64,000 bases of DNA. Origin: Podarcis muralis (taxonomy: Eukaryota). Shown piece by piece: positions 8,845 to 64,000 of the stretch (the first letter of the stretch is position 1; every line of letters begins with the position of its first letter). Made by a program: the position numbers and the translations under genes. Below the pieces are notes generated by a model. The model saw nothing but the letters and a program-made list of their open reading frames with translations. It was not told where the DNA came from and made no database searches. The stretch is from contig NC_135673.1 in the NCBI RefSeq assembly GCF_964188315.1, forward strand, positions 12,586,001-12,650,000, in the 5' to 3' direction.

Positions 8845-8851
8845 TGTGTTA

Positions 8852-14374: not shown

Positions 14375-14377
<3 letters not shown>

Positions 14378-14421
<44 letters not shown>
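14378..14421. repeat. (TA)n microsatellite
   Basis: Uninterrupted AT dinucleotide run of about 44 bp. Confidence 0.95.
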
Positions 14422-14424
<3 letters not shown>

Positions 14425-15162: not shown

Positions 15163-16203
15163 AGCTTTAAATCCAAGTTGTGCAACTGAAATTGATTTGG
15201 TGCTTTTGTGCAACAAACCTGCTTCCCCAATCCCATCAGAATCTTTATAATAAGTGACAAGAAAATGCACTGGAAAGTGATGGATAATAATTGCTTGATG
15301 AAGTATCTCTGGAAACAATAAGAATAGAAGTTCTAGAAAAGATGGTGTGACTGTTGTCTACCCTCCCCACAAATTTTGTGCAAATAAAAAAAAGAGCAAA
15401 GCGACCTTAATTGGATACCACCCATAGTGTGCAAACCTAAGTGTATTTAAGATTCAAAAGCTCAACCTAAACAATATCCCTTCAGTGGATGGTTATATCT
15501 GTTTTTCCCATGGGGACTCTCAGTTGGACATTCTATGCCAGGGATGCCCAAACTTTTTTCAAAGAGGGCCAGATTTGATGAAGTGAACATGCGTGAAGGC
15601 CGACTTTTTTTCGATTTTACCCCAAAGTTGTTGAGCTTTTTTAACAATTGTTGAGCTTTTTTTAGGATTTGACCCTAATGAATAAACTGCCACAGGGGCC
15701 GGATAAAAACAGACTTTGGACGTGCCTGTGAATGCTTCATGTAAAAAATCATGTGTGACTACTGCACGTGTGTGTGTGTGTGGAGGATCTTCTTTGTCTT
15801 ATCTACCTCTATGCAGTGACATAAAGAAGAAAGATTATATAAGATTACATAAAGAAGAAAGAGTTTATTTGTTGCCAGCAAATATGGACCCTGGCAAGCT
15901 AGTACTTGATATAATGGTTTGAAAAGAGTTTTTCCTTTGCATTAATTATTGTCAGAAGCAGGGGCACGCCTACAACTGGAGTTGCTACACCTGTGACTAA
16001 GGGGGAAATTGCAAGTTGATTTTTTCCCTAGTCACGAAAGCTTATGCAATTTTGAATATTTCCCAACACCTTATACCTTCAAGCTATTGCACTGTTTTTA
16101 TGAGGCTGCCATTCTCATGAACAGTTATGCCACTTTCAGACAATCTGTTAATTGAGCACTCGCATTGATTTGGAAGTTTGCAGGAAGGTTAGACAACCCA
16201 GGC

Positions 16204-16339
16204 CAGGCATAGGCAAACTTGGCCCTCCAGATATTTTGGGACTACAATTCCCACCATCCCTGACCACTGGTCCTGTTAACTAGGGATGATGGGAGTTATA
16301 TTCCCAAAACATCTGGAGGGCCAAGTTTGCCTATGCCTG
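16204..16339. mobile_element. Short hAT-type foldback MITE (relatives at about 4407-4520, 26229-26345, 40260-40395)
   Basis: TIR CAGGCATAGGCAAACTTGGCCCTCCAGAT and its reverse complement; degenerate 8-bp TSD ACCCAGGC / ACATAGGC. Confidence 0.8.
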
Positions 16340-18029: not shown

Positions 18030-18340
18030 ATGACGCCCAATTCCAGCCAATGAGCTCGCTCCGCTTGGCTCATGCAGCAGCCCTTGATTGGACTGCAACA
18101 CCGGTAGGGCGGCCCAATGAGGCTCGAGGACGGCCGAGAGGAAAGAGAAGGGGTGGGGAAGGAGAGCGACACAACCAAGCCTGACGGAGCGGTGCGCGAC
18201 GGGGCCCTGACGTCACAAACGGAGCGGACCTATCGGCTCCGGCCAGCTTGGTGGCAAGCGACCAATCGGGAGGCTCCAGCGAGAGAAAATGGGCCAATAG
18301 TGCGACTCCACGCAAGGCCACGGGAGCGTATATAAGATCC
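18030..18340 (+). promoter_or_regulatory. HSPA5: HSPA5 ER-stress promoter: three ERSEs, CRE, extra CCAAT boxes, TATA box
   Basis: Perfect ERSE CCAAT-N9-CCACG at 18294-18312; CCAAT-N9-CCAGC at 18262-18280; CCTAT-N9-CCAGC at 18229-18247; TGACGTCA at 18208-18215; TATATAAG at 18329-18336; further CCAAT at 18037, 18047 and 18114. Confidence 0.93.
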
Positions 18341-18357
18341 GCGGGGGATATCTGGGC

Positions 18358-18444
18358 CAGACCGTGATCTTTGAGTGAGAAAATCACAATTCAGATCGCT
18401 GCGTTCGTCGGATAGAGCGTGAGGCGACCGCGAGGTCCTGTTAG
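18358..18444 (+). other. HSPA5: HSPA5 non-coding exon 1 (TSS approximate)
   Basis: Begins about 25-30 nt after the TATA box, contains no ATG, ends at donor TAG|GTAAGG (18445). The ATG is 1.2 kb downstream. Confidence 0.7.
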
Positions 18445-19616
18445 GTAAGGCTCGGGGTGGCCTAGTGCTTGAGCGGAGGAGGGGGCCGGGGCCTAACGAG
18501 AAGGGGAGGGCGGCGTCTCCAAATCTATCGGGCCTTGTGGGGTCCCCCTTGCCCTCAAAATGCCCCTTCGTTCTCATTTATCCAGGTTCCCATTGAGAAA
18601 AATCCTATTGCGGCTCACGGTCCAAAGCGCGCCATTTTTATTCCCATTTCCTGCTAGTTCCATATTCCCCTTGGTGGTGGTGGGGTGGCGATTGCAACGA
18701 TTACAGTATTTGGCATGCATGCATGAATAAAAGGGGTTTATATCGCGGGATAGGAACAGAGGTTTGTGCGGGGTATTCTTTTTCGTTCCCCATGCTCCTT
18801 ATCGGGGAGAGGGGATTTATGCAAAAAGCAGAACTTGCTAGGCGTCTCTGTGTGGTGTTTGTTTTGTATATTGATAACCTTTACCGGTTTGGGGTAAATA
18901 GTAATGGCTGGGTTTCTGGTGGTGAGTACAGCGACTACTCCCTTCTCCCACTTTTTACGATGGTTTTCTTATGAGAATGGGTGAAGGCAAAACAGCTGCG
19001 GTTGTAGTGAACAATGTTAATTAATTGATTTGAGGCTGCTACTCGTTTTACAGTGGCTCCGTATACCAAAAAATGGGAGGGGGGAGCAGGCTATCTCTGG
19101 CACTGGATTACCAATTTACTCTTTGCCTTTAATGTTGGGATTGTCTGAACTAAAGTTAAGAGGTTGGTAGCCCTTTTTTGATGTGTTACGTTTTGCAGCT
19201 CTTACACACTGCCTTTCCACATGATTTTTATCAATGAATGTCTGTAGAATTTAGCACAGTGTGTGGGTTCACATTCATGTTTAAGTATCACGTCAGCTAC
19301 ATATTTTCTTAACCCCTTGCCTGCCTTTTCCTTGAACAGAAAAGTTTCCTTTGTATAGGATTTAGGGTGTTTTCTTTGAGCTGCCTGCATGTTTGCAGGC
19401 TGTGGGTCTTGGTAGCCTCTAGTCCTGATTGGCCCTCCCAGCCTTTGCTAATGATATGTGGGACCAGTAATACTTACTCTGTAAATCTGCCCCCATTTCT
19501 GTTAAATGGGCATCATGGTATTGTCTTTTTGCTCATAGTATTGCCACTGATGATTGATTTTACTTATTACAGGGTTTTTTTCCTCCCTGATTGTGAATAC
19601 TTGGTACAAGGGCAAA

Positions 19617-19735
19617 ATGAAGTATGCGTTTGTCTGCCTGTTGCTCATTGGCAGTGTATTTGCTGCTGATGACGACGACAAAAAGGAAGATGTGGGGACT
19701 GTGGTTGGCATTGATCTGGGAACCACATATTCCTG
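19617..19735 (+). CDS. HSPA5: HSPA5 (BiP/GRP78) coding exon 1, signal peptide
   Basis: [39 protein letters not shown], with the Hsp70 GIDLGTTYS motif; 119 nt; donor GTAAGT. Confidence 0.95.
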
Positions 19736-19855
19736 GTAAGTAAAAGAAGGGTGCCTATTTGATTGAGTGGCTTCTGGGTGTCTTGAATAGCTTATGGTCA
19801 CTGCACCAAAATATGGCCAAGATTTTTCTTGGTTGTGTTAATGCATTTTAATGTA

Positions 19856-20125
19856 CAGTGGTGCCCCGCAAGACGGAAAACCCGCTAGACGAAAGGGTTT
19901 TCCGTTTTTGAGTTGCTTCGCAAGACGATTTTCCCTATGGGCTTGCTTCGCAAGACAAAAACGTCTTGCGAGTCTTGCGATTTTTCCCCCGCTCCCCCCC
20001 CTTTTCTAAGCCGCTAATAGCCTTTTAGCAGCTAAACCGCTAATAGGGTTGCTTCGCAAGACGAGAAAACCGCTAGACGAAGAGACTCGCGGAACGGATT
20101 CTTTTTGTCTTGCGAGGCACCACTG
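19856..20125. mobile_element. Tigger/pogo-like MITE in an HSPA5 intron
   Basis: TA TSD; TIR CAGTGGTGCC(C/T)CGCAAGAC. Confidence 0.88.
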
Positions 20126-20193
20126 TACTGTATCTTAGGTGTATTATATTTTGTGAACCACCCAGAAGACTTTAACTAATACATATATTTTAA

Positions 20194-20496
<303 letters not shown>

Positions 20497-20801
20497 TGAA
20501 CACCTTTTGGTGTGAAATTTGAACCCAGCGTGTCCCCAATCATAGCACTGTCTTAGAGACACTAGGTTACTAAGCAATGTATGAAGTGATTTTCCAGTCC
20601 ACACAACTTATGGCACTGCTTTCACTCTGCTTAAGATACCAGCATCCAAGCATGGGTCATTCTGCATCTGGCAACCCGATGGGCAGGTTGTTTGGTCCTG
20701 CCGCTTCTTCAATGGAACCTCTTTAAGTCCACCACAATATTAATATTGTAGATGGTGTGCTTTTGGTTTGTAACCATGTCCACTTGTACTTGTCTTTACA
20801 G

Positions 20802-20939
20802 GTCATTGAAAAGAAGTCCAAGCCCCATATTCAGGTTGATATTGGAGGTGGCCAAATGAAGACCTTTGCCCCAGAAGAAATTTCAGCAATGGTTCTGACT
20901 AAAATGAAGGAGACTGCTGAGGCCTACTTGGGAAAGAAG
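20802..20939 (+). CDS. HSPA5: HSPA5 coding exon 3
   Basis: [46 protein letters not shown]; 138 nt. Confidence 0.97.
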
Positions 20940-21424
20940 GTAAGATGAAGTTTCTGCTGGAGCACACAAGCAAAAAGAATAGGCACTGAGGGGAGCCTTC
21001 GTGAATCTACCGTGTATGGAGATTGGCCAGTGGTTGGTCTAATCTTTTACTGCTTACTCTAGTTAGCAGCAGGTCTCGATGCCTTTCTGGTCTAGAGATC
21101 ATTCTAAACTGGCTTGAACATGTAATATTCTACTTACAATGTAAGTGCTCTGCCACTGAGCTTTGATGCCTCCTAAGAGGCCTGGCTGCTTGTACACGAG
21201 GAGTCCCTGCTTTTTTGGTTCCCCAGGACATAAAATGGATGGGGGTGGTAGAATTGTTCTCCAAGCTGAGAAGGCCAATCTGTAGCCTTCTGGATGTGTT
21301 TTAATTCCAATTTCCAATATCCCTGACAGTTGACAATGCCGGATGGGGCTGATGAGACCCCTGCAGCATCTAGAGGGCAACAGGCAATCCACTCCTCTAA
21401 ATAGTCTTGAAAGGTGCATTCTAG

Positions 21425-40821: not shown

Positions 40822-41379
40822 TTCCAACTCTTCAATCTAATCAATATTTTGTGTTAGAGTCCTATATATCTTTGCTCAGTGAGGTTTATTCAGATGTATG
40901 TGACTTTAGAAAGACGCAAAGCTTAGTGGAGAGCAGTAAGGGGCTCTTGCTCCTTTCATCAATTGATAAAAGGATTTTGCAGCAGTTGAAGCTTTTATTT
41001 TCTCTGTGTAGAAAGTGTCACCAGTCAACATTACCTCTTCAAAAAATTTTCCTCTGTTGGGATTAGCTGAGAAGCTGCAAACTGTCCCCCTCCTCATCTT
41101 CAGAGTATCAAGGCAGTGACTGATAGTGATGTGTGGGTTCCTTTTTCTTTGAGTGGGAGTTTGGTGGAAGGTTGCCTGGCAGCCAACTCCATGAAATGGG
41201 CTTGCAGTTAATATTGTGTTGTATGTTTGCTGCTTGGGATTAGGTTTTGTGTATGTGTGTGTTTTAAGTCTTTGCATGATCCCTCTGTGTTGGGTACTTT
41301 GAGTAGGGTGTATTTTTTCTTTCTTTCGTGAAACCTTCTCTTATCCACTTTACGGTAGCAAAAAAGCTATGCTAACATA

Positions 41380-41540
41380 CAGTCATACCTCATGTTACGT
41401 TTGTTTCAGGTTGAACATTTTCAGGTTGCGTCCCGTGGCAACCTGGAAGTACCGGAAAGGGTTACTTCCGGGTTTTGCCACGTGCACAGACGCGCAAAAT
41501 GACGTCATGCTCAGAAGCGGCGAATCATGACCCGCACACA
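41380..41540. mobile_element. Tigger/pogo-like MITE, truncated
   Basis: Left TIR CAGTCATACCTC with the shared CCGGAAGT/ACTTCCGG core; right end not found. Confidence 0.7.
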
Positions 41541-45254: not shown

Positions 45255-45803
45255 TCATAGAATCATAGAGTTGGAATAGACCACAAGGGCCATCGAGTCC
45301 AACCCCCTGCCAAGCAGGAAACACCATCAGAGCACTCCTGACATATGGCTGTCAAGCCTCTGCTTAAAGACCTCCAAAGAAGGAGACTCCACCACACTCC
45401 TTGGCAGCAAATTCCACTGTCGAACAGCTCTTACTGTCAGGAAGTTCTTCCTAATGTTTAGGTGGAATCTTCTTTCTTGTAGTTTGGATCCATTGCTCCG
45501 AGTCCGCTTCTCTGGAGCAGCAGAAAACAACCTTTCTCCCTCCTCTATGTGACATCCTTTTATATATTTGAACATGGCTATCATATCACCCCTTAACCTC
45601 CTCTTCTCCAGGCTAAACATGCCCAGCTCCCTTAGCCGTTCCTCATAAGGCGTCGTTTCCAGGCCTTTGACCATTTTGGTTGCCCTCCTCTGGACACGTT
45701 CCAGTTTGTCAGTGTCCTTCTTGAACTGTGGTGCCCAGAACTGGACACAGTACTCCAGGTGAGGTCTGACCAGAGCAGAATACAGTGGCACTATTACTTC
45801 CCC
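45255..45803 (-). mobile_element. CR1 LINE 3' fragment in PPP6C intron 3
   Basis: [13 protein letters not shown]...[10 protein letters not shown]...[13 protein letters not shown]; (TTCTATGA)n-type tail. Confidence 0.93.
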
Positions 45804-48860: not shown

Positions 48861-49001
48861 GTAAGGGTTTCTTTTAAGTGAATAACAAGTGACTTTCTGT
48901 CTCTGTTTCTCTAATTATACATTTACCAAAGGTTGTTTTTTTTTAATTTCAGGGTTGTGGTCCTAATAACATCTTTGCCTTCTGTCTTTTTCCCCTTCAA
49001 G

Positions 49002-49211
49002 TTAATAGATGAGCAAATCCTCTGTGTACATGGGGGCCTGTCTCCAGACATAAAAACACTGGACCAGATTCGGACTATCGAGCGCAACCAAGAGATCCCA
49101 CACAAAGGAGCTTTTTGTGACCTTGTTTGGTCTGACCCAGAAGATGTGGATACCTGGGCCATAAGTCCCCGAGGTGCAGGCTGGCTGTTTGGGGCAAAAG
49201 TCACAAATGAG
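49002..49211 (+). CDS. PPP6C: PPP6C exon 6
   Basis: [22 protein letters not shown]...DLVWSDP...GAKVTNE; 210 nt; AAG acceptor. Confidence 0.96.
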
Positions 49212-49586
49212 GTAAGAAAACCCAGTTTCCCAACCACGTCTCTGGCAGTGACTCTGGCCTGCAATCAGAAAGTATTGCCTGAGAAAGAGAAATGATGGGG
49301 AGTTTAAGACGGTGTTTGCCTCAGAAAACAGGTTTGCGTTTTGGGAACAGTTTCGTTTTATGATTCTGTTTTTGCTTCACACAACTGTTGCATTTGATAT
49401 CCTGTTACTTGCACGAGGCAAGTTAAGTCTGGGTGTGCCCATTCCATCTTATTCATGTTGCTGGGGGTACAAGTGCTAATAGTACTATTATTTTTATTAT
49501 ATCCCACCTGTTCTCCAAAGAGGTCAAGGTTACTAACATATGTGGTTCTCCCCCTCCTGATTTAATCCCCACCACAGCCCTATAAA

Positions 49587-50535: not shown

Positions 50536-50784
50536 TTTGTCCATATCAACAACTTAAAGCTCATCTGCCGAGCCCACCAGCTGGTGCACGAAGGTTATAA
50601 ATTTATGTTTGATGAGAAGTTGGTCACAGTGTGGTCTGCTCCGAACTACTGCTATCGCTGTGGAAATATTGCCTCAATCATGGTATTTAAAGATGTAAAT
50701 ACAAGGGAACCAAAGCTCTTCCGTGCAGTTCCAGACTCAGAACGTGTGATCCCCCCAAGAACAACCACACCGTATTTCCTCTGA
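50536..50784 (+). CDS. PPP6C: PPP6C final exon 7
   Basis: [21 protein letters not shown]...[11 protein letters not shown]...[11 protein letters not shown]. The seven exons sum to 918 nt = 305 aa + stop. Confidence 0.97.
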
Positions 50785-51163
50785 GATGTGGCTTTGCCCT
50801 TTTCTTTTGTGACATACCCTTTTAGCACTTTGCTGCTGAAATGCTGCCTCTTGCCTTTTATATACTTAAATTATCTAAATGTGTTGTATATTGTCAATAG
50901 GGGTGCATATTTAAATCTCTCTCCCTCCTCTTATCCCTACCTTACCTTTCTTGCCAGCTTTTGAAACGTCTCTGAGCACCCACCTACCTACCTACCTACC
51001 TGTTTTGTAGTACTTGTGATTTTTTTTTTAGTTCACTTCTTTTTTCCCCAAAAAACATAGGAACACGAATTTTCCCTTTAATGAGATAAATCTGAACAGC
51101 AAAACATCAGAACTAGTCTGATCTTTCATTCAGGGGGTTGACTTTGGGGAGGCTATTGTTTTT

Positions 51164-51490
51164 AATAAACTCTTTAAAAATTTCAGCAGCAAAGTTGTAT
51201 TTGGTGTGCATGATGGGACTGTCTGAGCCCTGCTAGTGAGTACATTTCCAAGATGTAAAAAAAATGTCCTGGTTTATATTTTGCTTTGTCAGCATAAATA
51301 AATGGTGTTAATGGCTGCCCCTGATCTCCCTCCACCCGTTGCTTTATTTTTTTAGGATTTAAACTAAAATGCAAAAACTCGTACAGGTAAACGAATTTGT
51401 ACAACGAAATAATTGTTCTGATTTTTCTCAGATACTTTGTCTTTTTAATAAAGTCATAACTCAGTCTCTAGGTTAAGCATTCAAAATAAA
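51164..51490 (+). terminator. PPP6C: PPP6C candidate polyadenylation signals
   Basis: AATAAA at 51164-51169, 51447-51452 and 51485-51490; which one is used is unknown. Confidence 0.6.
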
Positions 51491-51734
51491 GCCCTACATT
51501 GTTGATGTGAATTCATGTCTTTTCATTCTCCCCACCCTCTTTTCACAAAGAAATTTCACATGTGTGGTTATGGTTTGATTGATAGAATGTTTGGATTCTG
51601 CTAATACAGGACTTCCTTTTCCTTAGCTAAATTTCCACATAGCAGCCCCTGATTTTCAGGTGTGTCAGAGCTAGCAGTTGTACAAGGAAGTAAACAACTT
51701 TTAATAAGAAAAAGTGATACCTAGGCATTTGTGT

Positions 51735-51859
51735 CCCTAGATGTTTTAAATTATATGGCCCACAGAAGGATCTGACTTGGTTGCTTAATATGTACAGTAG
51801 TAATATTATGCAACCAAGTCAGACCCTTCTGTGGGCCATATAATTTAAAACATTTAGGG
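51735..51859. repeat. Near-perfect inverted repeat: 57-bp arms, 11-nt loop
   Basis: Arm 51735-51791 matches the reverse complement of 51803-51859 at 54 of 57 positions. Confidence 0.95.
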
Positions 51860-54047
51860 GTTATAAAACTGTAAGTTGTGATATAGTTGAATGAGTTGAA
51901 AGGCAATGAGACTTGCACCATGCGTGCTTAATACAAGCATTAGATGCATTAATCTCAGTTCACCTGTCCCATCTAAATGCAGGGCCCTCTTGTCACCTGA
52001 TGTAAATTACAGCTTTGGAGTGTGGCTGGTACTGTTATCTAGTACATAAACTGTTCCCTTGACACTGCCTTTTAATCAGGTATTTCGGATACACTGAAAT
52101 GTTTGCTTCCAGGCACCAGAATACAACTGGGTTGCTTTCATTTGGAGAGCTTGTCTAAAACATTTGGTAGAAATACTTGTATGCCGGAGTTTGCTTTTGT
52201 TTCAATCGTGTGCTTTTTGCTCTCACTGGAGAATGCCCACACTTTCGATTTCCAAGTTCCTCCTTGTTAATAGCCCTTCCTGGTATCACATCAGTAGATG
52301 TTCCAATTCAACCAAGATACAAATATTCAAGCACAAAGTATAAATATTCACTTTATATCGCTTTTACAAATCTTTTTCAAATGACGAAAGTTACCTTAGC
52401 TACACCAAATCAACTAATTCTACAAATGTGGTCAAGCTGTTTTTGCGGATGGACCAACTCCTCTCTCACAAGTTGGTTTTTATGGTTGCCTTGACCACTG
52501 CTTCCTATTTATGTGTGTGACCTTTTGCTTCTCTGCTGTACTTCGCAGCTTGCCTCTCATCAACACTGATGAGCTAATAGCTGTGGAAAATATCTATGAC
52601 TTCCGCTTAAGTGAACAATTCGGTATATGAGACAGTGATGATATATTGATCCTGGTAACAAGGATGCATGGCTATGTGCTTACAGAACCTATGCATAGCT
52701 TCTTCTTTTTTTAAAAAAAAATTAAATTAATTTTCTTTTTTCTCATTACAAATATACTTACCGGTATAACATACAGTTTACATAACGTCCCTCCCTCCCT
52801 TTGGACTTCCCCCAACTTCTATTTCTGATTTATTATCCTCATTATTGTATTCTGCTATTTTCTACAAATATCATATTTTTCCTTTTATTACATTATTTGT
52901 TCCCTATCCATAAAATTGTGAACGTTTATTTAAGTCCTACCATCAAGTCAATATTCTTTCTTTGTTTCTGCAAATATAAAGGGTTCCCACTCTTTTTCAA
53001 AATCCTTGTCCTTTTCCCGAAGTCTGTCTGTCAGCTTTGCCAACTCCACATAACATACATGGCTTCTTAATAGTAGAGCCCTGCTCTGCATTGTGGACTG
53101 CTGTTTTAATCTTATTCCCTGTGTCCATATATTTTAAAATTTATTTAAAAGCCTTTCTTTAACTGCTAAATATTTACACATCTCTTTAAGTGGTATACAA
53201 AAATACAACAATAAAACAGTATCCTAAAAACAGATGTATCCAAAGTTAGCTCTCTTAATCAATGTGGGTTCCTTAATTTCAGTGCGTCTTAGAATCATAA
53301 AATTGTAGAATCAGAATAGAAGGGACCCTGACGGTCATCTAGTCCAACTCTCTGCAATGCAGGAATCTCCGCTGGATTATACTCGGCAGATCACCATCCA
53401 AACTCTTAGAAACCTTTAAGGAAGGAGAGTTCACCACTTCTCATGGGAGTCTGTTCCACTGTTCATTAGCTCTTACTCTCAGAAAGTTCTTCCTGATGTT
53501 CAGTTGAAATCTCCTTTCTTGCAACTTGAATCCATTGGTTCATGCCCTAGACACGAGCAGGATAAAACACGCTTCCTCTATATGACAGTCCTTCAGCTAT
53601 TTGAAGATTGCTATCATATCTCCTCTCAGTTTCCTCTTTACCAGGCAAAACATACCCAATTCTCTCATCTATTCCTCATAAGGTTTGGTTCATCGTCCTC
53701 TGCACACGCTCAGATTGTTAATATCCTTTTTTAATTGTGGTTCCCAGAACTGGTCACAGTACTGCAGGTGTGGTCTGATTTCGGTAGATTGGGACACTAC
53801 TGTTGATGCAGCCTAGAATCGCATTAGCTTGATTTGCTGCTATATCATACTGCTGACTCATGTTAAACTTGTGGTCTACTAACACCTCTAGATCCTATTC
53901 ACAGATACTGCTAGTAAGCCAGGTGTCCTCCATCTTATATTTGTGCAGTTGGTTCTTCCTGCCTAAGTTTAGAACCTTACATTTGTTCCTATTGAAACTG
54001 ATTTGTTAATTTGGGCCCAGTTCTCCAGTCTGTTAAGGTTGTTTATA

Positions 54048-54272
54048 CAGTCATACCTCGGGTTGCGAACGTGATCCGTGTGGGAGGCGTGTTTGCAACC
54101 CACAGCACCGCATCTGCGAGTGATGTGCTTCTGCGCATGCACGTGATGTCATTTTGCGCTTCTGCGCGAGCGCCGAAACCTGGAAGTAACCCATTCCGGT
54201 ACTTTTGGGTTTGACGTGGTTAGCAACCTGAAAATGCGCAACCTGCAGCATTTGTAACCCGAGGTATGACTG
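54048..54272. mobile_element. Tigger/pogo-like MITE nested in CR1
   Basis: TA TSD; symmetric CAGTCATACCTCGG ends. Confidence 0.88.
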
Positions 54273-54536
54273 TAATGATGTTGAAAAAGAATGGGCCCAG
54301 GACAGAACCCTGCAGTACCCCATTTAACATTTTTTTCCAGGATGATGAGGAAATGTCAGTGAGCATTCTTTGGTTTCCATCAATCAAACAGCTACAAATA
54401 CACCTAACAGTTACCTTGTACAGTCCACATTTTACCAGCTTCACAAGAATATCATGGGGGACTTTGTCAAAACACTTACTGAAATCAAGATAAACTATGT
54501 TCACAACATCCCCATGAACCACCAAGCTTATAACTA

Positions 54537-54781
54537 CAGTGGACCCTCCAGATACGAATTAAATTTGATTCAGGGGTCTGTCCGCAACCCGAAAAGTCTG
54601 TAGGCAGAGGCACAGCTTCTGCACGCAGCATGATTGAGTGCTTCTGCACACATGTGCGGCACGCAGAGCGCTTCTGCGCATGTGCGTGGGGTGAAACCCA
54701 GAAGTATACACTTCCAGTTTTGCCATGTTCGTATCCCCAAAATTACGTATCCAGAGCGGTACGGAATTAGAGGGTCCACTG
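54537..54781. mobile_element. Tigger/pogo-like MITE nested in CR1
   Basis: TA TSD; CAGTGGACCCTC / GAGGGTCCACTG. Confidence 0.85.
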
Positions 54782-54885
54782 TATATATATAAAACAGATT
54801 TGTATTGCATGAGTTGTTTTGAGAAACTCATGCTGGGTCTTAGTAATCACAGCACCCTTTCCTAGGTGCTCACAGATTGACCATA

Positions 54886-55104
54886 CAGTCATACCTCCAC
54901 GAACATCCACCCCCTCGATCATCCATTTCAGCGGACATCTGAGGCAAACCCAGAAGTACCGGAACGGGTTACTTCTGGATTTGCCGCTTTGCGCATGTGC
55001 AGAAGTGCTAAACCGATACACACGCAGAGCGACGCTGTCAAGTGTCTCTTGTTGAGCGTCCGGGGCTCCGGAATGGATCCTGGACACTTGATGAGGTACC
55101 ACTA
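54886..55104. mobile_element. Tigger/pogo-like MITE nested in CR1, asymmetric ends
   Basis: Left CAGTCATACCTC, right GAGGTACCACTA. Confidence 0.8.
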
Positions 55105-55271
55105 ATTATCTCTTGTAGGACCTTTCCTGGTATTGACGTCAAGCTGACCGGTTGGCAGTTACAGTACCTGGGGCTTATTTCTCCCCCTTTTTGAAGATTG
55201 AGACAACATTTGCCCTCTAGTCTGCAGGGACCTCACCAAGAGTTGTCCAAGAGTTCTCAAAGATTATAGAC

Positions 55272-55621
55272 CAGGGGTCAGCAACCTTTTTCAGCCATGG
55301 GCCGGTCCAGCATCCCTCAGGCTGGACTATATGGGGGGGGGGGAATGAACGAATTCCTATGCCCCACAAATAACCCAGAGATTTAAATAAAAGGACACAT
55401 TCTAATATTGTAAAAACACCAGGCAGGCCCCACAAATAACCCAGAGATGCATTTTAAATAAAAGCACACATTCTACTCATGTAAAAACACCAGGCAGGAC
55501 CCACAAATAACCCAGAGATGCATTTTAAATAAAAAGACGCATTCTACTCATGTAAAAATACGCTGATTCCCGGACTGTCCATGGGCCAGATTGAGAAGGC
55601 GATTGGTTCGCATCCGGCCCC
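55272..55621. mobile_element. Partial hAT MITE with three internal tandem units of about 70 bp
   Basis: Left end CAGGGGTCAGCAACC preceded by TTATAGAC; right TIR missing; inserted between CR1 codons VIS and SIIFENSW. Confidence 0.8.
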
Positions 55622-56164
55622 CAGACACTGAGATTACATCCGCAAGCTCTTTTAGTACCCTTGGATGCAGCTCCTCAAACCCTGAAGATCGGAATTCATT
55701 TAAATTAGGTGTTCCCTTACCACATTTCCTCCTATATTGGGCGGCAGCTCTCTTCTTGCATTGTTTATTTTTTTATCACCAGGTTGGGCACTGTTTTCCT
55801 TTTGGGTGAAGATGGAGGCAAAGTAAGTGTTGAGTAGTTCCACCTTCTCTCTGTCACCCAAATAATTTTCCATCTCCACGCAATGGTCCTACTACTTGCT
55901 GCTTCTACTCTAAGTAGAACTTAGTTGGATATAAACAGTATTATGAAAACAGAAATTCAGTAATAAGAGTGAGCTTATGGTTCAAGGAAAGCCTGTGCAG
56001 ATAGAATATAGAATAAAATATGTTGGCATTTGGGGTGGGTTGGAGTACTTTCTGGGGCTTTCTGAATTGAAGTCAATTACTAACTTACATTTTCACTTGT
56101 ACAATACTGCAAATGATTTATGTTGCTGTATATCTGCTGTGACGCTTGTAATGTCCTTTATAAT

Positions 56165-56608
56165 TGTGGTGTTCGTACGGAGCCCCCGGTCATCTCACGG
56201 ACTGTTGACCCGTACGCTACTAATCCGCTGCCACCAACCAGGTCCTCCCTGGTAAATCACTTAGTCTCAGTCAGGTTCTTAAATTAACAAAGTGTTTATT
56301 GCAAACACAAATAAACTTTAACTGCATTCAAACGTTGTTACTCTTTACCTTCTTAGTCTTATTTTATCCTGTCTCTAACTCTTCTACCTCCCCTCACACA
56401 AGAACCAACTGCGCTAACTGTCTCTCTATTTCCAACTGTCTGCCAACTGCTTTCCCAACTGCCTTTCCCAAACAACCAAAATTAACCCAAACCTCAGGCT
56501 GAGCCCTTTTATAAGCAGGTAGGCTCCGCCTCTGGCTTTTCTATTGGTCTACCTGTTAATCCCCCCTCTCTCTATACAGACATTTTCAAACAAACGGGCA
56601 AAGCCACA
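56165..56608 (-). mobile_element. Solo LTR (444 bp)
   Basis: TGT…ACA termini; exact 5-bp TSD ATAAT at 56160-56164 and 56609-56613; minus-strand order CCAAT (56547), GC box (56532), TATAAAA (56513), AATAAA (56300). Confidence 0.85.
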
Positions 56609-57494
56609 ATAATAATTTTTAAAATTGTAGCTACCGAGTTATTGTCATTAGGATCCTATGGACAACCCAGTTTGAAGCAGCTGTTTTCTCAAAATCGTCA
56701 CAGTGTAAATGTGTGTGGGTGTACACAAGAAACTGTAATTACAGTACATAATGACTAATGTGTTTTTTTTTTTAATAGGGAGGTTTTGCACAATACTTCT
56801 TTAAATACTTTATTTAAGTATTTTATTGCTGTTTTGTTGATTGTTTTAAAGGTGTGGGGTGGAATCTGAGATTGTATTTAATGGAAGCCTACAGCTTCTT
56901 AATATTTTTTGGATATTGCAATCTATGCCCACTAAGCAGCATATTGAGAGCACTCTTGTTCAAGACCTGAATATTTCTTTTGAAAAACACAGTGGAAATG
57001 GATATTGCTCTCACACTGCTTACAAAAAATATATGCCTTAATTCTCCCCCATTCTGAAACATAATTATGGACTAGCAATGTATGCTCTTCTTCCTGTGGA
57101 TTATTTTTAAAGAGTGTGCACATACACAGATGCAGTAATACCTGCCCATGCTCCAAGAATGGAAAAATATAGCGGAGGAGTGATTAAGATGGGAAGTATT
57201 CCCAAACAGCATGAATATATTCTGTCAAGCTCTTGCTACTGGTGTGGATGCCAAATGGCAGAATAGCAATGAATATGAATATGAATGACTTAGAAACTGG
57301 AATGTGAGGACACTAGTGTCCCAGTCACCTGCACACAAAAATAGGATCCAAACAATCCATTTGTGCAATAACTCCCCTTGTCTGGAAGCAACCATAATCT
57401 GGCATTTGTTGTAAATAATTTGCCAAGCTTGATTATAATTTTTTTTAAATGTAGATGTACACTGAGTGATTTGAGAGACTGAAGTGTAACAGTA

Positions 57495-57733
57495 CAGTCA
57501 TACCTTGGGTTACAGACGCTTCAGGTTGTGCGTTTTCAGGTTACGGGCGTGCCTAACCCCGGAAGTACCGGAATGGGTTACATCCAGGTTTCAGCGCTCA
57601 CCCATGTGCAGGAACACTAAATCACACTTTGCGCATAAGCGCCAAATCGCAACCTGTGCGTGCACAGATGTGGTGCTGCGGGTTGTGAACATGCCTCCCG
57701 CACGGATCAAGTTCGCCACCCGAGCGTCCACTG
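57495..57733. mobile_element. Tigger/pogo-like MITE, same family as 8852-9018 and 54048-54272
   Basis: TA TSD; left CAGTCATACCTTGG, right CCGAGCGTCCACTG. Confidence 0.85.
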
Positions 57734-58196
57734 TACTTGTTTTGCAGGCCCCTTGAAATGAAACTGGCTTGACCAGCTTCCTAGACCTGCAGTGATCCCC
57801 CTGCCTCCCACCCTCCCCTGCCTCCTGCCTAGGGATTTGCAATATGATGCATTGAAAACAAAGCAGACTGGCTGGATTTATTTTTTAAAATGAAGCTGAT
57901 TGGAGAGAAATTGAAACAAGCAAAATGTGAAATGAATTGAAGTTGAATTGGACCGAGATAAATTGACCTGGGTGTTGGCCATTTTGAAAAGGGCCAAAGT
58001 TCAACAGAGAAACCGGAGTGAACTGAGGTGAAAGTGAATCAAGTTCTCGCAGCTGTTTATATTAAGAGATTAGGCAGATTAACAAAACCGCATTGTGGTA
58101 CATGAATTGAGGCCGCGGACACGCATATGCATCTTTATTTAAAAGGTGCACTTTTAATTAGAATCCCAAATCGAAGTGGCACCGAAGGGAAGGGGG

Positions 58197-58351
58197 CATA
58201 GCTGTCAACTTTCGGATTTGAAAATAAGGGATCAGTAGCTTCACCTGTCCCGGGGACAGTCTACGGGATATCCAACAATCCGGGATAGCAGCGGGAAACG
58301 GCGCTGGAATAAGGGGATTTGCCGCAAAAAAAGGGAAGGTTGACAGCTATG
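58197..58351. mobile_element. 155-bp hAT MITE at the edge of the ARPC5L promoter
   Basis: TIR CATAGCTGTCAAC / GTTGACAGCTATG; exact 8-bp TSD GAAGGGGG at 58189-58196 and 58352-58359. Confidence 0.92.
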
Positions 58352-58359
58352 GAAGGGGG

Positions 58360-58702
58360 CGAGAGCGATAAAAAAGCTGCTCCGAGCGGGGAAGGTGGTT
58401 GCAGTTTAGAGATCACGTGGGTAGGACCGGCTCGAGGCGGAGTGACGCAGAGCGAACGGGAGCTTCTCCTCTTCGCTCTTTCTCGCCCTCCGCCCTCGCC
58501 GCAGGCCAGGCCCCGCCCAGGGGGTGTGTTGGCCGCGCCTCTCAGTCGGCCCCGCCCTCGCCCTGGCAGGCGGGCGGGCGTGGTTTCCTTTTCCGAGCAG
58601 TGCTGTCCTGAGGAGGGAAGTGTAGCCTCGGCGGCGGCGGCGGCGTGCGTGGCTGTGGCGGCGGCGCCTCGGGAGAGCGCCCGGCTGCCGTCCGGCTCAG
58701 CT
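58360..58702 (+). promoter_or_regulatory. ARPC5L: ARPC5L CpG-island promoter and 5'UTR
   Basis: CACGTG at 58414-58419; TGACGCA at 58443-58449; several GC boxes at 58550-58580; pyrimidine tract at 58463-58490. Confidence 0.8.
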
Positions 58703-58866
58703 ATGGCGCGGAGCTCGCTCTCCTCGCGCTTCCGCCGCCTCGACATCGATCAGTTCGACGAGAACCGCTTCGTGGAAGAGCCCGACGGCGCCGATGCGGG
58801 GAGCGGGGCCGGCGCGGCGGAGGCGGAGGGAGGAGCCGGCCCGGAGGTGGAGGCGGCGCTGCGGCA
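58703..58866 (+). CDS. ARPC5L: ARPC5L (Arp2/3 complex subunit 5-like) exon 1; the rest of the gene is outside the window
   Basis: MARSSLSSRFRRLDIDQFDENRFVEE...EVEAALR+CA matches the ARPC5L N-terminus (SSRFRR, versus SSARFRK in ARPC5); followed by ATATCCTTT. Confidence 0.88.
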
Positions 58867-58875
58867 ATATCCTTT
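58867..58875 (+). other. ARPC5L: U12 (minor spliceosome) AT-AC-type 5' splice site
   Basis: ATATCCTTT is an exact U12 donor consensus and lies where homology to the ARPC5 family (…LRQG) ends; no GT donor is available there. Confidence 0.85.
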
Positions 58876-58974
58876 CTCGGCCCGAGCGAGCGACCCCGGA
58901 GGCCCCTCGATGTCGCCCACCCTTGACTGGCAAGGCGCCCTTCCAGGGTTTCAGGCAGCGGGGTGGGGTGTGGG

Positions 58975-58975
<1 letters not shown>

Positions 58976-59013
<38 letters not shown>
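58976..59013. repeat. (TCTG)n microsatellite in ARPC5L intron 1
   Basis: Read directly from sequence. Confidence 0.93.
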
Positions 59014-59015
<2 letters not shown>

Positions 59016-59946
59016 TCCAACCATCCCTAGAAATGCCGTTGGGGATTGAACTGGAGACCTTTCGCGTGCAAAGCATGTGCTGTGCCACTCAGCTGTGGTC
59101 CACCCCCATTAGAGATAAAGTGAAATGCTAGTGCTGAATAAAGATGTGCTTTTAAATACAGAGTCAGACCGTCGGTCCGCCTAGTTCAGTGTTGTCCGCA
59201 CGGACTGGCAGCAGCTCTCTAATAGGGTTTGAGGCAGGGGGATCTCTCCCATCCTTACCTGGCGATGCTGTTGAGGATCCAGCTAGGGCCCTTCTGCATG
59301 CAAAGCTAATGTTCTGTTGTTTGAGCAAGGACTACTAAATAAAAAAGGAACGTGGGAAGCTGCCTTATTCTTTTCCCCCTGTGTGCATTGGGCATTGCTT
59401 CTCTTCAGCCTCCCCCTATTCCCCCCCCCTACCCGTACTCTTTTGGAGATGCCTTTGTTTTTGCCCACTTTTGTCTCTGTGTGCCTCAATGCCTTCATTT
59501 CCTGCTACTCTCTCCCCAGTGTGCTTTGGGGGCATTTCTCTGCTGCCCACCTTTCTCCCTCTTCTCCCATATGGGCCATTACTTCTCATCTCTATTCTCT
59601 TCCCTGCTCTGTTTCATGGGGCATTCTTTTTAAACCCTTTTCTCCCCATGTGCCTGGGTGCTTTCATCTTTCCCACTTCTTCTCTTCCTCCTTCCCATTG
59701 TCTTTGTATCAATCTGTGAAAAAACATTAATTTTATCCAGAACAGGGATTCTCCTTTAAGCGCAATGTGAATTGAGGGGGCACCTCATAATGTTTTTTAC
59801 CATATAGGGGAAGGACTGTAGCTCAGTGGTAGTCTTTGGTTTGCATGCAAAGTGTCTGATATTTCCCCTCTGACATCTCTAGGTAGGACTAGGACGGAAC
59901 CCAGTTTGAAATCCTGGATATCTGCTGCAAGTCAGTGTGGACAGTA

Positions 59947-60320
59947 CAGTGGTGCCCCGCAAGACGAATGCCTCGCAAGGTGGAAAACCCGCTAGACGAA
60001 AGGGTTTTCTGTTTTGGAGGTGCTTCGCAAAACGAATTTCCTATGGGCTTGCTTCGCAAGACGAAAATGTATTGCGAGTTCCTGCAGGTTTCCCCCCCCT
60101 TTTTCCCAAGCCGTTAAGCCGCTTATCAGCTGATCCGCTAAGCAGCTGATCCGCTAGGCCGCTTATCAGCTGATCCGCTAAGCCGCTTAACAGCTGATCC
60201 GCTAAGCCGCTAATAGCGCTAATCTGCTAAGCCGCTAATGGGCTTGCTTCGCAAGACGAAAAAACCGCAAGACGAAGAGACTCGCGGAACGGATTCTTTT
60301 CGTCTTGCGAGGCACCACTG
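59947..60320. mobile_element. Tigger/pogo-like MITE with an expanded internal 24-bp minisatellite
   Basis: TA TSD; same ends and body as 19856-20125 but 104 bp longer. Confidence 0.88.
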
Positions 60321-60914
60321 TACAGAGAATAATGGACTCAGTAATGGGTACTGACTGTTTGAAGGCCACTGTGCTAGATTGTCCTCCTCTGCCTGATCTT
60401 TCCTTCCCTGATAGATTCTAAGGAGTTGGTTGTATCTCTTGTTGTAGCTGCTTTTATGGAGAAGGCACCATTCTTTTATTTCTCCCCCCTCCCTGGAATA
60501 TTTCTGTCCACTTCACTGCTTATCATTCTCTCTCTTCGAGCAACTGTCACTGAGGAGGAATGTAGACTTTGCAAGATCAGGCAAGTGCGTAGTTAGCCAT
60601 TTACCCTACTGTGAAACTCTGGAAAGCCTTGAGAAGATATTCATTCTCCTAAACACCTCATCTCTGACTTCCCCCTTTTGGAATTGGCCTATCCTGTCAG
60701 AATTTGCTTCACATCGAAACACTGTCTCTCCTTTTGTCCAAGATATATAGAGTTTCTATTCAGTGTTAGTGCTACACCTATTGAAATTAATGTGCATGTC
60801 ACTCTCGGTTCATTCATTTCAGTGGGTCTGCTCTGAGCAGAACTTAGTTGTGCACAACCCTTAGCTTCCTATGATTTCATTTAGTGGGGGGAGGGAGTCC
60901 TCCTTTACCTAGTA

Positions 60915-61132
60915 CAATGGTACCTCAGGTTACAGATACTTCAGGTTACAGACTCCGCCAAGCCAGAAATAGTACCTCGGGTTAATAACTTTGCTTCAGG
61001 ATGAGAACAGAAATCGCGTGGTGGTGGCAGCAGGAGGCTCCATTAGCTAAAGTGGTACCTCAGGTTAAGAACAGTTTCAGGTTAAGAACGGACCTCCAGA
61101 ACGAATTAAGTTCTTAAACCGAGGTAACACGG
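60915..61132. mobile_element. Tigger/pogo-like MITE
   Basis: Collinear with 46363-46595. Confidence 0.82.
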
Positions 61133-64000
61133 TAATGAACTTCATAATAACCATGTTTTTCTTCCATCAGAGGGTCTGGGTAGTCCTCAGGGGTGCTCAT
61201 CCTTTTTTAAGAAGGCAGAGGTTGAAAAGGGAGGGGTATGGATGGAGCTGGCATTTGAAAATTGCCAAGGGTAGGGTGAAGCAGCCTCTAGTGAAGGAAC
61301 TGTCTTAAGGGTTGGTCCTTAGTGCCTGTAGCCTTCTGGAAGTTGCTTTACTTGTAGTGGTTGCTGATTGTAGCCATTCGTGTCTAGTCATTACAAGGAG
61401 AGGCAGCTTGGGTCTGGAAAATTGTGTGAATGATCTGAGGAGCTTCAGATACCTGCAGAAACACTGTCTGAAAAATGGGTGTGTGGGCATCTGAACAGGC
61501 TCTGTTGGGGAAGGATTATGAATGTGTAGAGAGGCCAGGTGATGTTGCAGGGCAGGTCACCATGGTATGAGGTTAGCCCTACCCCGCGGCTTTCCACAGT
61601 GTGTAAGCAATTAAAAACATGCGCAAGGGTCGTGAGGCATGCTTCCGTCATGCATGGAATCAGGTTTGGCAAGAAGGCACTTGCCTTACTGGATCTCTGA
61701 AGGGTGCTGGTGACAGGGGCGGGCTTGTTCGTGCCAGCCGGAATTGGCAAATGTGGCCCTGCCTGTGCCTAATGGTGAAATGGGAGCCTGTGCTTTCTGG
61801 AATGAGGAGCAGAAAGTCCAGTTCAGAGACCAACAGGTCAGGAAGCTATTGCTTCTGTCATTTCCAGGAGAGAAAGAAAGATGTTAAAATATGAGTGTGT
61901 GCTTTTGCTCCAAAAAAAGATGTTGAAATGTAACCAGAGCTGAATTGATGCAGCTCTGTCTTGGACAGTGCTTGCTGAGAGACTGAAATAATGTATTTAA
62001 AGTGTGACCTTGTACCGTCTGTAATATTCCAAGGAGGCCAGTGACAGCTGACGCACTACAAAAGACAGGAAAGGCCAGCATGTTACAGAATCAATAGTAT
62101 TATCAGCTCTTTCGTGGGTTCAAGCAGTATATTTGCTGCTGGGTTTGTCCTAGCTGCTTGCTTGCTTTCTCGCTCTCAGTAGTTGGCATGTGTATCTTTC
62201 CAGTAAGAATAACCCCATAGATTCAGAAGTATAAGCTTTATGAGATGAAGGGGATGTGACTCACAATGGCAGAATTATGAACAGAAGTGTTAAATGCTTT
62301 GAGATTCTCAAGATGAGATGCTTTGAAACAGTATTGTTCATGCTTCTAATGATGAGTCTCCCAGGTGTGGCACCTCTTGGCTTTCTCTACCTTTCATCGC
62401 CTTTGCCATTGGATTTCCATAAGTTGTTCTCTTGGTTAAATGGAACACACTAGTCTCTGCACTTAAATATTGTTATTCTTTGCTGAGAGTAGGCTGTGCA
62501 GTTGGTAGAAGCATATTTCTGCTTGGCTGAAGGAAGTCCTGTGAACTCTGTATGAAAGCAATTTCCAGAGCTTGGGTTCCTGCTTTGGATAGGTGTCTTT
62601 TTAATTTTTAGGTAGCTGTTAGTTATGCCAGAGTCTGAAATCCAAAGTTAACTGCATCCTTGTAGATAACAAGAATTACAAATCAACATGATTGTTTTTT
62701 CACTCCTTCTCATTTTGTTGTTTAAAGCTGTGGTTTACAAACTCTTATTTCTGGGATTCCAGGAGCCCCTCCACAAGATTAGTAATTTGGGGGTGGGGGT
62801 GCTTCCTGAAAGATTGGTTAACTAACAAACTATCTTCCCCTGCGATGTACAGCCTTAGGTTTTTGTGGGGCTACAGTGATGCAGTGCATGGTTACAGTGC
62901 ATGGTTACCTTTAGGATTATCTGCAATGCAAATGTATTCTGCACCAGATATGAATGGGGTTCTTTTGCAGACAGATCTGCATAGAAGGTATTCCCTGTAG
63001 AGGTGTGAAGTTTGAAAAACATGGGTTTGCTGCCGGTGAGGGTAGTGTTGTAGTGTTTGAAATTAGCCAGCTGCATTTTGCACCTGCCTGTTGGCCACTT
63101 GCTACCTGACATCTTCACCATCTGGAGGTGCACGCCTGGGGATCATTGGCTCTTGACTGTTTTCACACACCAATACCACATCCTGTAGAATTCTATCAGT
63201 TATATTTTATCTGCACAATCAGAATGAATTTCAGGAACCAAAATGCTTTTTCTGTGCAGCCTGAGCTGAAGCAGTGAACAATGTTATAATTATTTGTAGC
63301 TTGTCTTCACTTACCCCACCCCACTGCCCTGCTCACAGTTGTGAAGAATATTCTTATGTTATGAATGGTCCATATCACCATTAAGAAAAGAGATAGGAAC
63401 AGGCCAGTACATATGTTGACTGTCCGTGGATCAAGTGACTTTTCTTCTTTAAGTTCTCAAAGCTTTTAACCTAGCTCAAGGTTGTATTCTAAACTAGCCA
63501 GATATTTAACTGATAATCAATCAATCATAGTCAGTCCAAAACTGAAAAATAAGACTTTCGAGATATCTTGCCCAAAAATGGCAACTAGACATTCCGTTTT
63601 GGAGACGGAAACCTTGGTTTAAGGAGCCATTTGGTGCCTAGTTTATATATCTGAGTTTCTAACACTAGGTAAGTGTTGTGGATCATTTAGAGTCTATTCT
63701 TCATCCCTTAGTGAATGAAACAAGACATTTTGGGTGCTGTTCTTCCAGGATTTGCCAAGTTGTGAAATCACCATTACTGGTGAATTAAATCAAACCATTG
63801 AGAGTTCATATGAAGGAAAAGAATATTCCACTCCCTGCTGTTTTCTCTATTCAATGAATGAATAGAGTTAAACTGGTATAAAGATGATCAGAATAACTCT
63901 GCTGCCAACCACCGAGGGACATAACCCAGATTGTTCCTTTTATTAAGAGGTCAATGCCTTTTAAATTTGAATTCTGTAACATGCATAGGTCACACAGGCT

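What the first reader, a model, noticed from the sequence alone, without database searches (positions are those of the whole stretch)
50784..58866. Synteny break: ARPC5L directly follows PPP6C on the same strand, with no SCAI/GOLGA1 between them and no RPL35 partner
Seen: only about 8 kb of repeats separate the PPP6C stop from ARPC5L exon 1 (+), and I found no SCAI, GOLGA1 or RPL35 exons there. Known: read in this orientation, the human order is GAPVD1(-), HSPA5(+), RABEPK(-), PPP6C(+), SCAI(+), GOLGA1(+), ARPC5L(-), RPL35(+), with ARPC5L and RPL35 head-to-head. The first four genes match. Inference: a lineage-specific inversion of SCAI-GOLGA1-ARPC5L, with one breakpoint in 51.5-58.4 kb that split the ARPC5L/RPL35 bidirectional promoter.
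Basis: partly seen in the sequence, partly recalled or inferred. Interest (0 to 1): 0.7.

Follow-up and report, generated by a model that had tools for sequence, protein, structure and literature searches.

The report
Ancient sauropsid inversion junction PPP6C–ARPC5L
The odd gene order is real, but it is not special to this lizard: it is one end of a very old inversion shared by geckos, turtles and birds, while sharks, frogs and mammals keep the original order.

Summary
The PPP6C stop is at 50782-50784 (+). ARPC5L exon 1 is at 58703-58866 (+), 7,918 bp further on. No SCAI, GOLGA1 or RPL35 coding sequence lies between them or elsewhere in the window.

The inversion reading is right in geometry but wrong in age. 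Gecko (Eublepharis), turtle (Carettochelys) and zebra finch all show PPP6C(+) → ARPC5L(+) → GOLGA1(−). Emu and a second gecko (Heteronotia) show the other junction, SCAI(−) head-to-head with RPL35(+). Catshark, Xenopus, opossum and bat keep RPL35 head-to-head with ARPC5L, and a published cattle gene list gives RPL35, ARPC5L, GOLGA1, SCAI, PPP6C in that order.

So a single inversion of SCAI-GOLGA1-ARPC5L became fixed on the sauropsid stem. Mammals are not the derived state, and the order is not an assembly misjoin.

A split "bidirectional promoter" is not shown. The ancestral RPL35–ARPC5L spacing is about 0.4 kb in catshark but 4-8 kb in opossum, bat and probably frog.

RNA reads show that exon 1 is expressed from the + strand. 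It is spliced through a conserved U12-type AT-AC intron, and no stable divergent transcript is seen upstream.

This is an ordinary fixed rearrangement, visible in public annotations. I found no paper describing it. Interest is low.

The parts
50584..50784 (+). PPP6C last coding exon, stop codon at 50782-50784
   Evidence: ORF. tblastx to the last exon of the 305-aa Metallophos gene of gecko L001, turtle L002 and finch L004.
50785..51523 (+). PPP6C 3'UTR, conserved with gecko; AATAAA at 51447 and 51485
   Evidence: Collinear tblastx blocks between window 50799-51523 and L001 4601-5335. Poly(A) signals.
51524..58300 (.). Repeat-rich spacer holding the ancient inversion junction; no trace of the breakpoint itself remains
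   Evidence: Intra-window repeat copies. High word depths in two DNA runs. No SCAI, GOLGA1 or RPL35 coding matches.
54223..54558 (-). Degenerate LINE reverse-transcriptase fragment
   Evidence: Pfam RVT_1, E = 5.6e-07, 29.9 bits.
55361..55558 (.). 71-bp tandem repeat (2.9 copies) belonging to an extremely abundant genomic repeat
   Evidence: TRF. Word depth 2-6x10^5 in X1 and X2, and RNA reads from other copies.
58300..58960 (.). CpG island and ARPC5L promoter (GC 0.69-0.72, CpG o/e 0.8-1.27)
   Evidence: A TTCCGG-type motif and a GGC-repeat block upstream of the ATG align with gecko, turtle, finch and bat.
58600..58702 (+). ARPC5L 5'UTR; transcription starts at about 58600-58628
   Evidence: RNA depth is 0 in 58400-58599 and 31-45 in 58600-58799. 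Reads cover the CGG length variant at 58628.
58703..58866 (+). ARPC5L exon 1 coding part (54 codons plus two bases of the Gln codon)
   Evidence: RNA reads leave the genome after 58867 and continue into sequence encoding GDMLRAFHAA, which is exon 2.
58867..64000 (+). 5' part of ARPC5L intron 1, a U12-type AT-AC intron (donor ATATCCTT at 58867); exons 2-4 lie beyond the window
   Evidence: Donor motif conserved in gecko, turtle, finch, bat and arowana, with a TCCTTRAC-like branch site and an AC end. Only exon 1 was found in the window. Conserved intronic blocks at 61.5-62.6 kb against gecko.

Best explanation
The window holds the proximal junction of an ancient chromosomal inversion. In the ancestral jawed-vertebrate order the genes run PPP6C(+), SCAI(+), GOLGA1(+), ARPC5L(-), RPL35(+). 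One inversion had breakpoints in two intergenic spaces: between the PPP6C 3' end and the SCAI 5' end, and between the ARPC5L 5' end and the RPL35 5' end. It turned the SCAI-GOLGA1-ARPC5L block around. The result is PPP6C(+), ARPC5L(+), GOLGA1(-), SCAI(-), RPL35(+). The inversion was fixed on the sauropsid stem, after the split from mammals and before lepidosaurs split from turtles and birds. This squamate inherited it. ARPC5L kept its own CpG-island core promoter and its U12-type first intron, and it is expressed. RPL35 exchanged its head-to-head neighbour ARPC5L for SCAI. Shown here: both new adjacencies in sauropsids, the old adjacency in four outgroup lineages, and expression and splicing of exon 1 in this species. 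Inferred: that it was a single event, its timing, and that this species' SCAI/RPL35 junction looks like those of emu and gecko.
For: PPP6C(305 aa, Metallophos, +) → ARPC5L(+) → GRIP-domain gene of 800-850 aa(-) is seen in the gecko Eublepharis, the turtle Carettochelys and two zebra finch assemblies, which also show HSPA5(+) and RABEPK(-) upstream. The window is collinear with these. SCAI(PF12070, -) lies head-to-head with RPL35(+) in emu, 680 bp apart and followed by an OLF-domain gene, and in the gecko Heteronotia. The ancestral state, RPL35(-)/ARPC5L(+)/GOLGA1(-), is seen in catshark, opossum and bat. ARPC5L(-)/RPL35(+) is seen in Xenopus laevis. A published cattle list gives WDR38, RPL35, ARPC5L, GOLGA1, SCAI, PPP6C, RABEPK, HSPA5, GAPVD1 (PMC10818672). 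The gene is a true ARPC5L: the best hits carry that name, the AT-AC intron sits at the same codon from arowana to bat, and RNA reads splice exon 1 onto exon 2.
Against: The GOLGA1-SCAI adjacency inside the inverted block was not seen directly in any sauropsid. The two junctions were read in different sauropsid species, and the distal junction was not read in this genome because it lies outside the window. The PPP6C-SCAI adjacency in outgroups rests on the cattle list and on general knowledge of the human map, not on a locus fetched here. Short-read contigs break at the repeats and do not bridge 53-59 kb, so the junction in this assembly is supported by cross-species conservation and not by spanning reads. 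Tuatara and crocodilians were not examined.
Confidence: 0.9

Rival explanations
1. A recent inversion specific to lacertids or squamates, which is the narrow sense of the first reader's 'lineage-specific'.
For: None beyond the contrast with the human order.
Against: The same PPP6C→ARPC5L→GOLGA1(-) order occurs in turtle and zebra finch as well as gecko. The matching SCAI/RPL35 junction occurs in emu.
Confidence: 0.01
2. The sauropsid order is ancestral, and mammals carry the derived inversion.
For: The sauropsid order is widespread.
Against: Catshark and Xenopus, both outgroups to amniotes, share RPL35 head-to-head with ARPC5L with opossum and bat.
Confidence: 0.02
3. An assembly misjoin in the repeat-rich 51.5-58.4 kb interval.
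For: The interval is full of high-copy repeats, and no short-read contig bridges it.
Against: Independent chromosome-scale assemblies of four other sauropsids have the same adjacency and orientation. In finch the gap is only about 650 bp.
Confidence: 0.01
4. The gene is ARPC5, a paralogous duplicate or a retrocopy rather than the ARPC5L orthologue.
For: On its own, exon 1 scores below the Pfam P16-Arc cut-off (E = 0.025).
Against: The top hits are all named ARPC5L. It has the orthologous U12 intron at the same codon and is spliced. In relatives it is followed by GOLGA1, as ARPC5L is everywhere.
Confidence: 0.01
5. The same end state was reached by two or more events rather than one inversion, for example nested inversions or a transposition of RPL35 and its distal neighbours.
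For: Only the end states are observed. WDR38 is not called between RPL35 and the OLF-domain gene in emu, so further local change did happen.
Against: One inversion explains both new adjacencies and all orientation flips. No intermediate arrangement appeared in any lineage sampled.
Confidence: 0.05

Closest known systems
Mammalian 9q33.3-type gene order (OLFML2A-WDR38-RPL35-ARPC5L-GOLGA1-SCAI-PPP6C-RABEPK-HSPA5-GAPVD1), as listed for cattle chr11 in PMC10818672
   Same: The same genes are present, with the same HSPA5-RABEPK-PPP6C block and the same ARPC5L-GOLGA1 tail-to-tail pair.
   Different: The SCAI-GOLGA1-ARPC5L block is inverted. ARPC5L follows PPP6C on the same strand, and in the other sauropsids examined RPL35 faces SCAI.
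Sauropsid orthologous loci (Eublepharis L001, Carettochelys L002, Taeniopygia L003/L004)
   Same: Identical order and orientation of PPP6C, ARPC5L and GOLGA1, and the same AT-AC first intron.
   Different: Only the spacer length differs: 7.9 kb here, 5.4 kb in gecko, 4.4 kb in turtle and 0.65 kb in finch. The extra length here is transposable-element debris.
Human ARPC5L U12-type intron (PMC3958305)
   Same: ARPC5L carries a U12-type intron. Here the donor is ATATCCTT, and relatives show a TCCTTRAC-like branch site and an AC terminus.
   Different: Nothing notable. It is a conserved feature and not a novelty.

Membership tests
ARPC5L orthologue (ARP2/3 complex 16 kDa subunit, P16-Arc, ARPC5L branch) | Sequence closest to proteins named ARPC5L rather than ARPC5 | tested here: met
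   Exon 1 matches squamate, bird and turtle ARPC5L with E from 1e-22 to 1e-9. No ARPC5 entry ranks above them.
ARPC5L orthologue (ARP2/3 complex 16 kDa subunit, P16-Arc, ARPC5L branch) | P16-Arc (PF04699) domain | tested here: inconclusive
   Only exon 1 is in the window. Pfam gives E = 0.025, 15.4 bits, below the 21.9 cut-off. The full-length homologues carry PF04699.
ARPC5L orthologue (ARP2/3 complex 16 kDa subunit, P16-Arc, ARPC5L branch) | Conserved synteny with GOLGA1 tail-to-tail | not testable with these tools
   GOLGA1 would lie beyond base 64000. The pairing is present in every relative examined.
Fixed chromosomal inversion | Two new adjacencies, one at each end of the block | tested here: met
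   PPP6C 3' end next to ARPC5L 5' end (window). SCAI 5' end next to RPL35 5' end.
Fixed chromosomal inversion | Genes inside the block are flipped relative to the flanks, with internal order kept | tested here: inconclusive
   The orientations of ARPC5L, GOLGA1 and SCAI are all flipped. The GOLGA1-SCAI adjacency in a sauropsid was not observed because the look-ups were exhausted.
Fixed chromosomal inversion | Polarity fixed by outgroups | tested here: met
   Catshark, Xenopus, opossum and bat share RPL35 head-to-head with ARPC5L.
Bidirectional promoter pair (head-to-head starts less than about 1 kb apart) for ancestral ARPC5L/RPL35 | Start sites within about 1 kb on opposite strands | tested here: inconclusive
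   434 bp between the called genes in catshark. About 4.2 kb in opossum. At least 5.2 kb from the ARPC5L ATG to RPL35 exon 2 in bat. 1.1 kb by the gene model, or 8.3 kb to the true exon 2, in frog.
U12-type AT-AC intron | Donor /ATATCCTT; branch site TCCTTRAC 10-15 nt before the acceptor; AC end | tested here: met
   The donor is at 58867 in the window. All three elements are present in gecko, turtle, finch, bat and arowana. The RNA junction is confirmed. The window lacks the 3' end of the intron.

The most novel reading that the evidence does not exclude
The inversion is a clean rare genomic change that marks Sauropsida and swapped promoter partners. RPL35, a strong housekeeping ribosomal-protein gene, lost ARPC5L and gained SCAI as its head-to-head neighbour (680 bp apart in emu). 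ARPC5L came to sit directly downstream of the PPP6C poly(A) site (0.65 kb in finch). This may have changed ARPC5L or SCAI expression in all reptiles and birds relative to mammals and amphibians.
Probability: 0.12. Interest if true: 0.4.

Novelty: new member of a known kind. Interest (0 to 1): 0.22.

Why it matters
The result shows that the apparent synteny break is not a feature of this genome and not an assembly error. It is an inherited rearrangement roughly 280-320 million years old (dates from general knowledge of amniote divergence times). Its uses are modest. It is a shared derived marker for Sauropsida. It warns against using the human order as the reference when flagging rearrangements in reptiles. 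It is also a small natural experiment in swapping the head-to-head partner of a ribosomal-protein gene.

Tried and rejected
- The search of earlier findings by place and by gene names returned nothing.
- The caecilian and bichir look-ups showed no neighbour within 10 kb.
- The arowana look-up showed two ARPC5L copies with an unidentified 314-aa upstream gene, which says nothing about polarity.
- The PDB search could not separate PP6 from PP2A, PP1 or calcineurin catalytic subunits. The name PPP6C therefore rests on the 305-aa length, on the C-terminal ...TTTPYFL, which I recognise from memory as the PPP6C C-terminus, and on conserved synteny.
- Pfam found no family in nine of the ten longest stop-free stretches of the spacer.
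- Promoter-region blastn between lineages gave only one short, near-chance match. The MAFFT promoter alignment has only 49% mean column identity, so the conserved TTCCGG-type motif is a weak observation.
- Short-read Logan contigs do not bridge the repeats, so they neither confirm nor contradict contiguity.
- Paper searches for a description of this inversion found none.
- I did not verify GAPVD1 in the window.
- Spliced protein models were never joined. Exons were searched one at a time by reference: ARPC5L exon 1 inside a stop-free reference, and bat RPL35 exon 2 likewise. The joined-model step was left out.
Primate and human RPL35 or ARPC5L entries that appeared in the hit lists were not looked up or fetched.
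Full report
**What is in the window**

The window has no N runs. The ORF at 50584-50784 (+) ends ...[13 protein letters not shown] and then a stop. It is the last coding exon of a PP2A-like phosphatase. The preceding exon, inside 48933-49292, matches Pfam Metallophos at E = 2.3e-10. Translated comparison shows the window is collinear with zebra finch locus L004. In that locus the called genes are HSP70 (651 aa, +), a Kelch protein (360 aa, −), a 305-aa Metallophos protein (+), ARPC5L (+) and a GRIP-domain protein (−). In window coordinates:
- HSPA5 is at about 19.7-24.0 kb (+).
- RABEPK is at about 25.5-31 kb (−).
- PPP6C is at about 36.5-50.8 kb (+).

I did not verify GAPVD1.

ARPC5L exon 1 begins with ATG at 58703 and ends at 58866. 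Its best database matches are squamate proteins named ARPC5L (Crotalus 90%, Eublepharis 89%), followed by birds and turtles. tblastn with five squamate ARPC5L proteins finds only exon 1 in the window, so exons 2-4 lie beyond base 64000. The PPP6C stop and the ARPC5L ATG are 7,918 bp apart.

**Nothing is hidden in the spacer**

Six RPL35 proteins gave no credible hit anywhere in the window. The best was E = 0.024, inside HSPA5. The same queries hit bat, emu and gecko control loci at 1e-24 to 1e-29. SCAI-bearing DNA from emu and gecko gave no hit. GOLGA1-bearing DNA matched only an interspersed repeat that also sits in a PPP6C intron.

The spacer has three parts:
- About 0.74 kb of PPP6C 3'UTR, conserved with gecko to roughly 51523, with AATAAA at 51447 and 51485.
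- A stretch rich in transposable elements. It holds a LINE reverse-transcriptase fragment (RVT_1), inverted SINE-like copies, and a 71-bp tandem repeat whose word depth in genomic runs reaches 6x10^5.
- A CpG island at about 58.3-58.96 kb.

**Is the order specific to this lineage? No.**

Look-ups of ARPC5L proteins in annotated assemblies give PPP6C(305 aa, +) → ARPC5L(+) → GRIP-domain gene of 800-850 aa(−) in three lineages:
- the gecko Eublepharis macularius;
- the turtle Carettochelys insculpta;
- two zebra finch assemblies.

The spacer is 5.4 kb in gecko, 4.4 kb in turtle and about 0.65 kb in finch. Squamates, turtles and birds bracket crown Sauropsida, so the arrangement predates that crown group. 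Four independent chromosome-scale assemblies agreeing also rules out a misjoin here.

**Polarity**

The outgroups keep RPL35 head-to-head with ARPC5L:
- Catshark (Scyliorhinus) has RPL35 (123 aa, Ribosomal_L29, −) 434 bp from ARPC5L(+), followed by the GRIP gene(−).
- Opossum has a WD40 gene(+), RPL35(−), ARPC5L(+) and an 845-aa gene(−).
- Bat (L007) has RPL35 exons on the − strand at 622-807, 3455-3529 and 4638-4784, upstream of ARPC5L(+) at 10001, followed by the GRIP gene(−).
- Xenopus laevis has ARPC5L(−) head-to-head with RPL35(+).
- A published cattle window lists, in order, OLFML2A, WDR38, RPL35, ARPC5L, GOLGA1, SCAI, PPP6C, RABEPK, HSPA5, GAPVD1 (PMC10818672).

So the mammal-type order is ancestral for jawed vertebrates, and the sauropsid order is derived.

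**The second junction**

An inversion of SCAI-GOLGA1-ARPC5L predicts that in sauropsids SCAI(−) will face RPL35(+).
- In emu, a 641-aa SCAI-domain gene(−) ends 680 bp from RPL35(+), which is followed by an OLF-domain gene(−).
- In the gecko Heteronotia binoei, SCAI(−) again lies upstream of RPL35(+).

Both new adjacencies and all orientation changes are what a single inversion produces.

**The "split bidirectional promoter"**

The head-to-head adjacency is ancestral, but the spacing varies:
- 434 bp in catshark gene calls.
- About 4.2 kb in opossum.
- At least 5.2 kb from the ARPC5L ATG to RPL35 exon 2 in bat.
- In frog, 1.1 kb by a doubtful gene model, or 8.3 kb to the real exon 2.

A shared promoter at the time of the inversion is therefore possible but not shown.

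ARPC5L kept its own core promoter. A TTCCGG-type motif and a GGC-repeat block upstream of the ATG align between this window, gecko, turtle, finch and bat. The alignment is weak, with 49% mean column identity.

**Expression in this species**

Runs of the same, coded organism hold the stretch in at least five studies. Two stranded RNA runs show the following:
- Exon 1 is covered at depth 31-45 with the first mate on the − strand. In most stranded libraries that means + strand RNA.
- There are no reads in 58400-58599, so transcription starts at about 58600-58628.
- There is no opposite-strand signal in the single-copy bins upstream. No stable divergent transcript was seen in these two samples.
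- 36 and 61 reads leave the genome after 58867 and continue as GGTGATATGCTCAGAGCTTTCCATGCGGCT (GDMLRAFHAA). That is exon 2.

**The first intron**

The intron begins ATATCCTT at 58867. In gecko, turtle, finch, bat and arowana the same donor is paired with a TCCTTRAC-like branch site about 12-15 nt before an AC terminus. This is the U12-type ARPC5L intron already known in human (PMC3958305).

**Comparison and verdict**

This is the orthologous ARPC5L in the standard sauropsid arrangement. The finding is a real difference from human, explained by a fixed inversion on the sauropsid stem. I found no paper describing it, but it can be read directly from public annotations.

**Procedural statements**
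- Spliced models were never joined. Exons were searched singly by reference.
- Human and primate entries in the hit lists were not followed.

Noticed in passing
window 58867-58874, and L001-L005, L007: ARPC5L intron 1 is a U12-type AT-AC intron. The donor is ATATCCTT, and relatives show a TCCTTRAC-like branch site and an AC end. It is conserved at the same codon from arowana to bat, and RNA reads confirm the junction here.
   Followed up: yes
window 55361-55558: A 71-bp tandem repeat (2.9 copies, 90% matches) belongs to a repeat family with a word depth of 2-6x10^5 in genomic runs. RNA reads come from other copies of it. The family was not identified.
   Followed up: partly
window 53405-53885 and 45312-45797; turtle L002 30015-30595: An interspersed repeat is present twice in the window: once in a PPP6C intron and once in the spacer, about 70% identical to each other. 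It is still recognisable at protein level (50-68% tblastx identity) in a turtle GOLGA1 intron. It is an old repeat family shared by lizard and turtle.
   Followed up: no
window 54057-54277 and 57490-57724, also 3785-3937, 8849-8984, 9192-9344, 41378-41507: SINE-like element copies (70-78% identical) are scattered through the window. Two of them sit in inverted orientation inside the spacer.
   Followed up: no
window 58849 and 58628: RNA reads show a G/A variant at 58849 in exon 1 (28 of 42 and 30 of 75 reads). They also show a CGG insertion variant after 58628 in the GGC-repeat 5'UTR (7 of 16 and 5 of 23 reads). These are probably alleles.
   Followed up: no
window 58975-59015: A perfect (TGTC)10 microsatellite lies about 110 bp into ARPC5L intron 1.
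   Followed up: no
window 61530-62602 vs L001 11316-12297: Collinear conserved blocks lie inside ARPC5L intron 1 between this species and the gecko Eublepharis. They may be intronic regulatory elements.
   Followed up: no
L004 9355-10000 (zebra finch): Only about 650 bp separate the PPP6C stop from the ARPC5L ATG in finch, and an AATAAA lies a few hundred bp upstream of that ATG. The PPP6C 3' end and the ARPC5L promoter almost abut, which raises the possibility of read-through or interference.
   Followed up: no
L005 and L006 (Scleropages formosus LR584071.1, about 540 kb apart): Two loci encode the identical 150-aa ARPC5L, each with a 314-aa gene upstream on the same strand. This is either a recent segmental duplication or an assembly duplication.
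   Followed up: no
L008 (emu) 11670-21003: No WDR38-like gene is called between RPL35 and the OLF-domain gene in emu, whereas opossum, cattle and possibly frog have one next to RPL35. This may be a loss in birds or an annotation gap.
   Followed up: no
L010 10001-10045 (Xenopus laevis): The 137-aa RPL35 model carries a 15-residue first exon 7.2 kb upstream of the real exon 2 (17200-17346). This is probably a mis-annotated 5' exon, and it inflates the apparent closeness to ARPC5L.
   Followed up: partly
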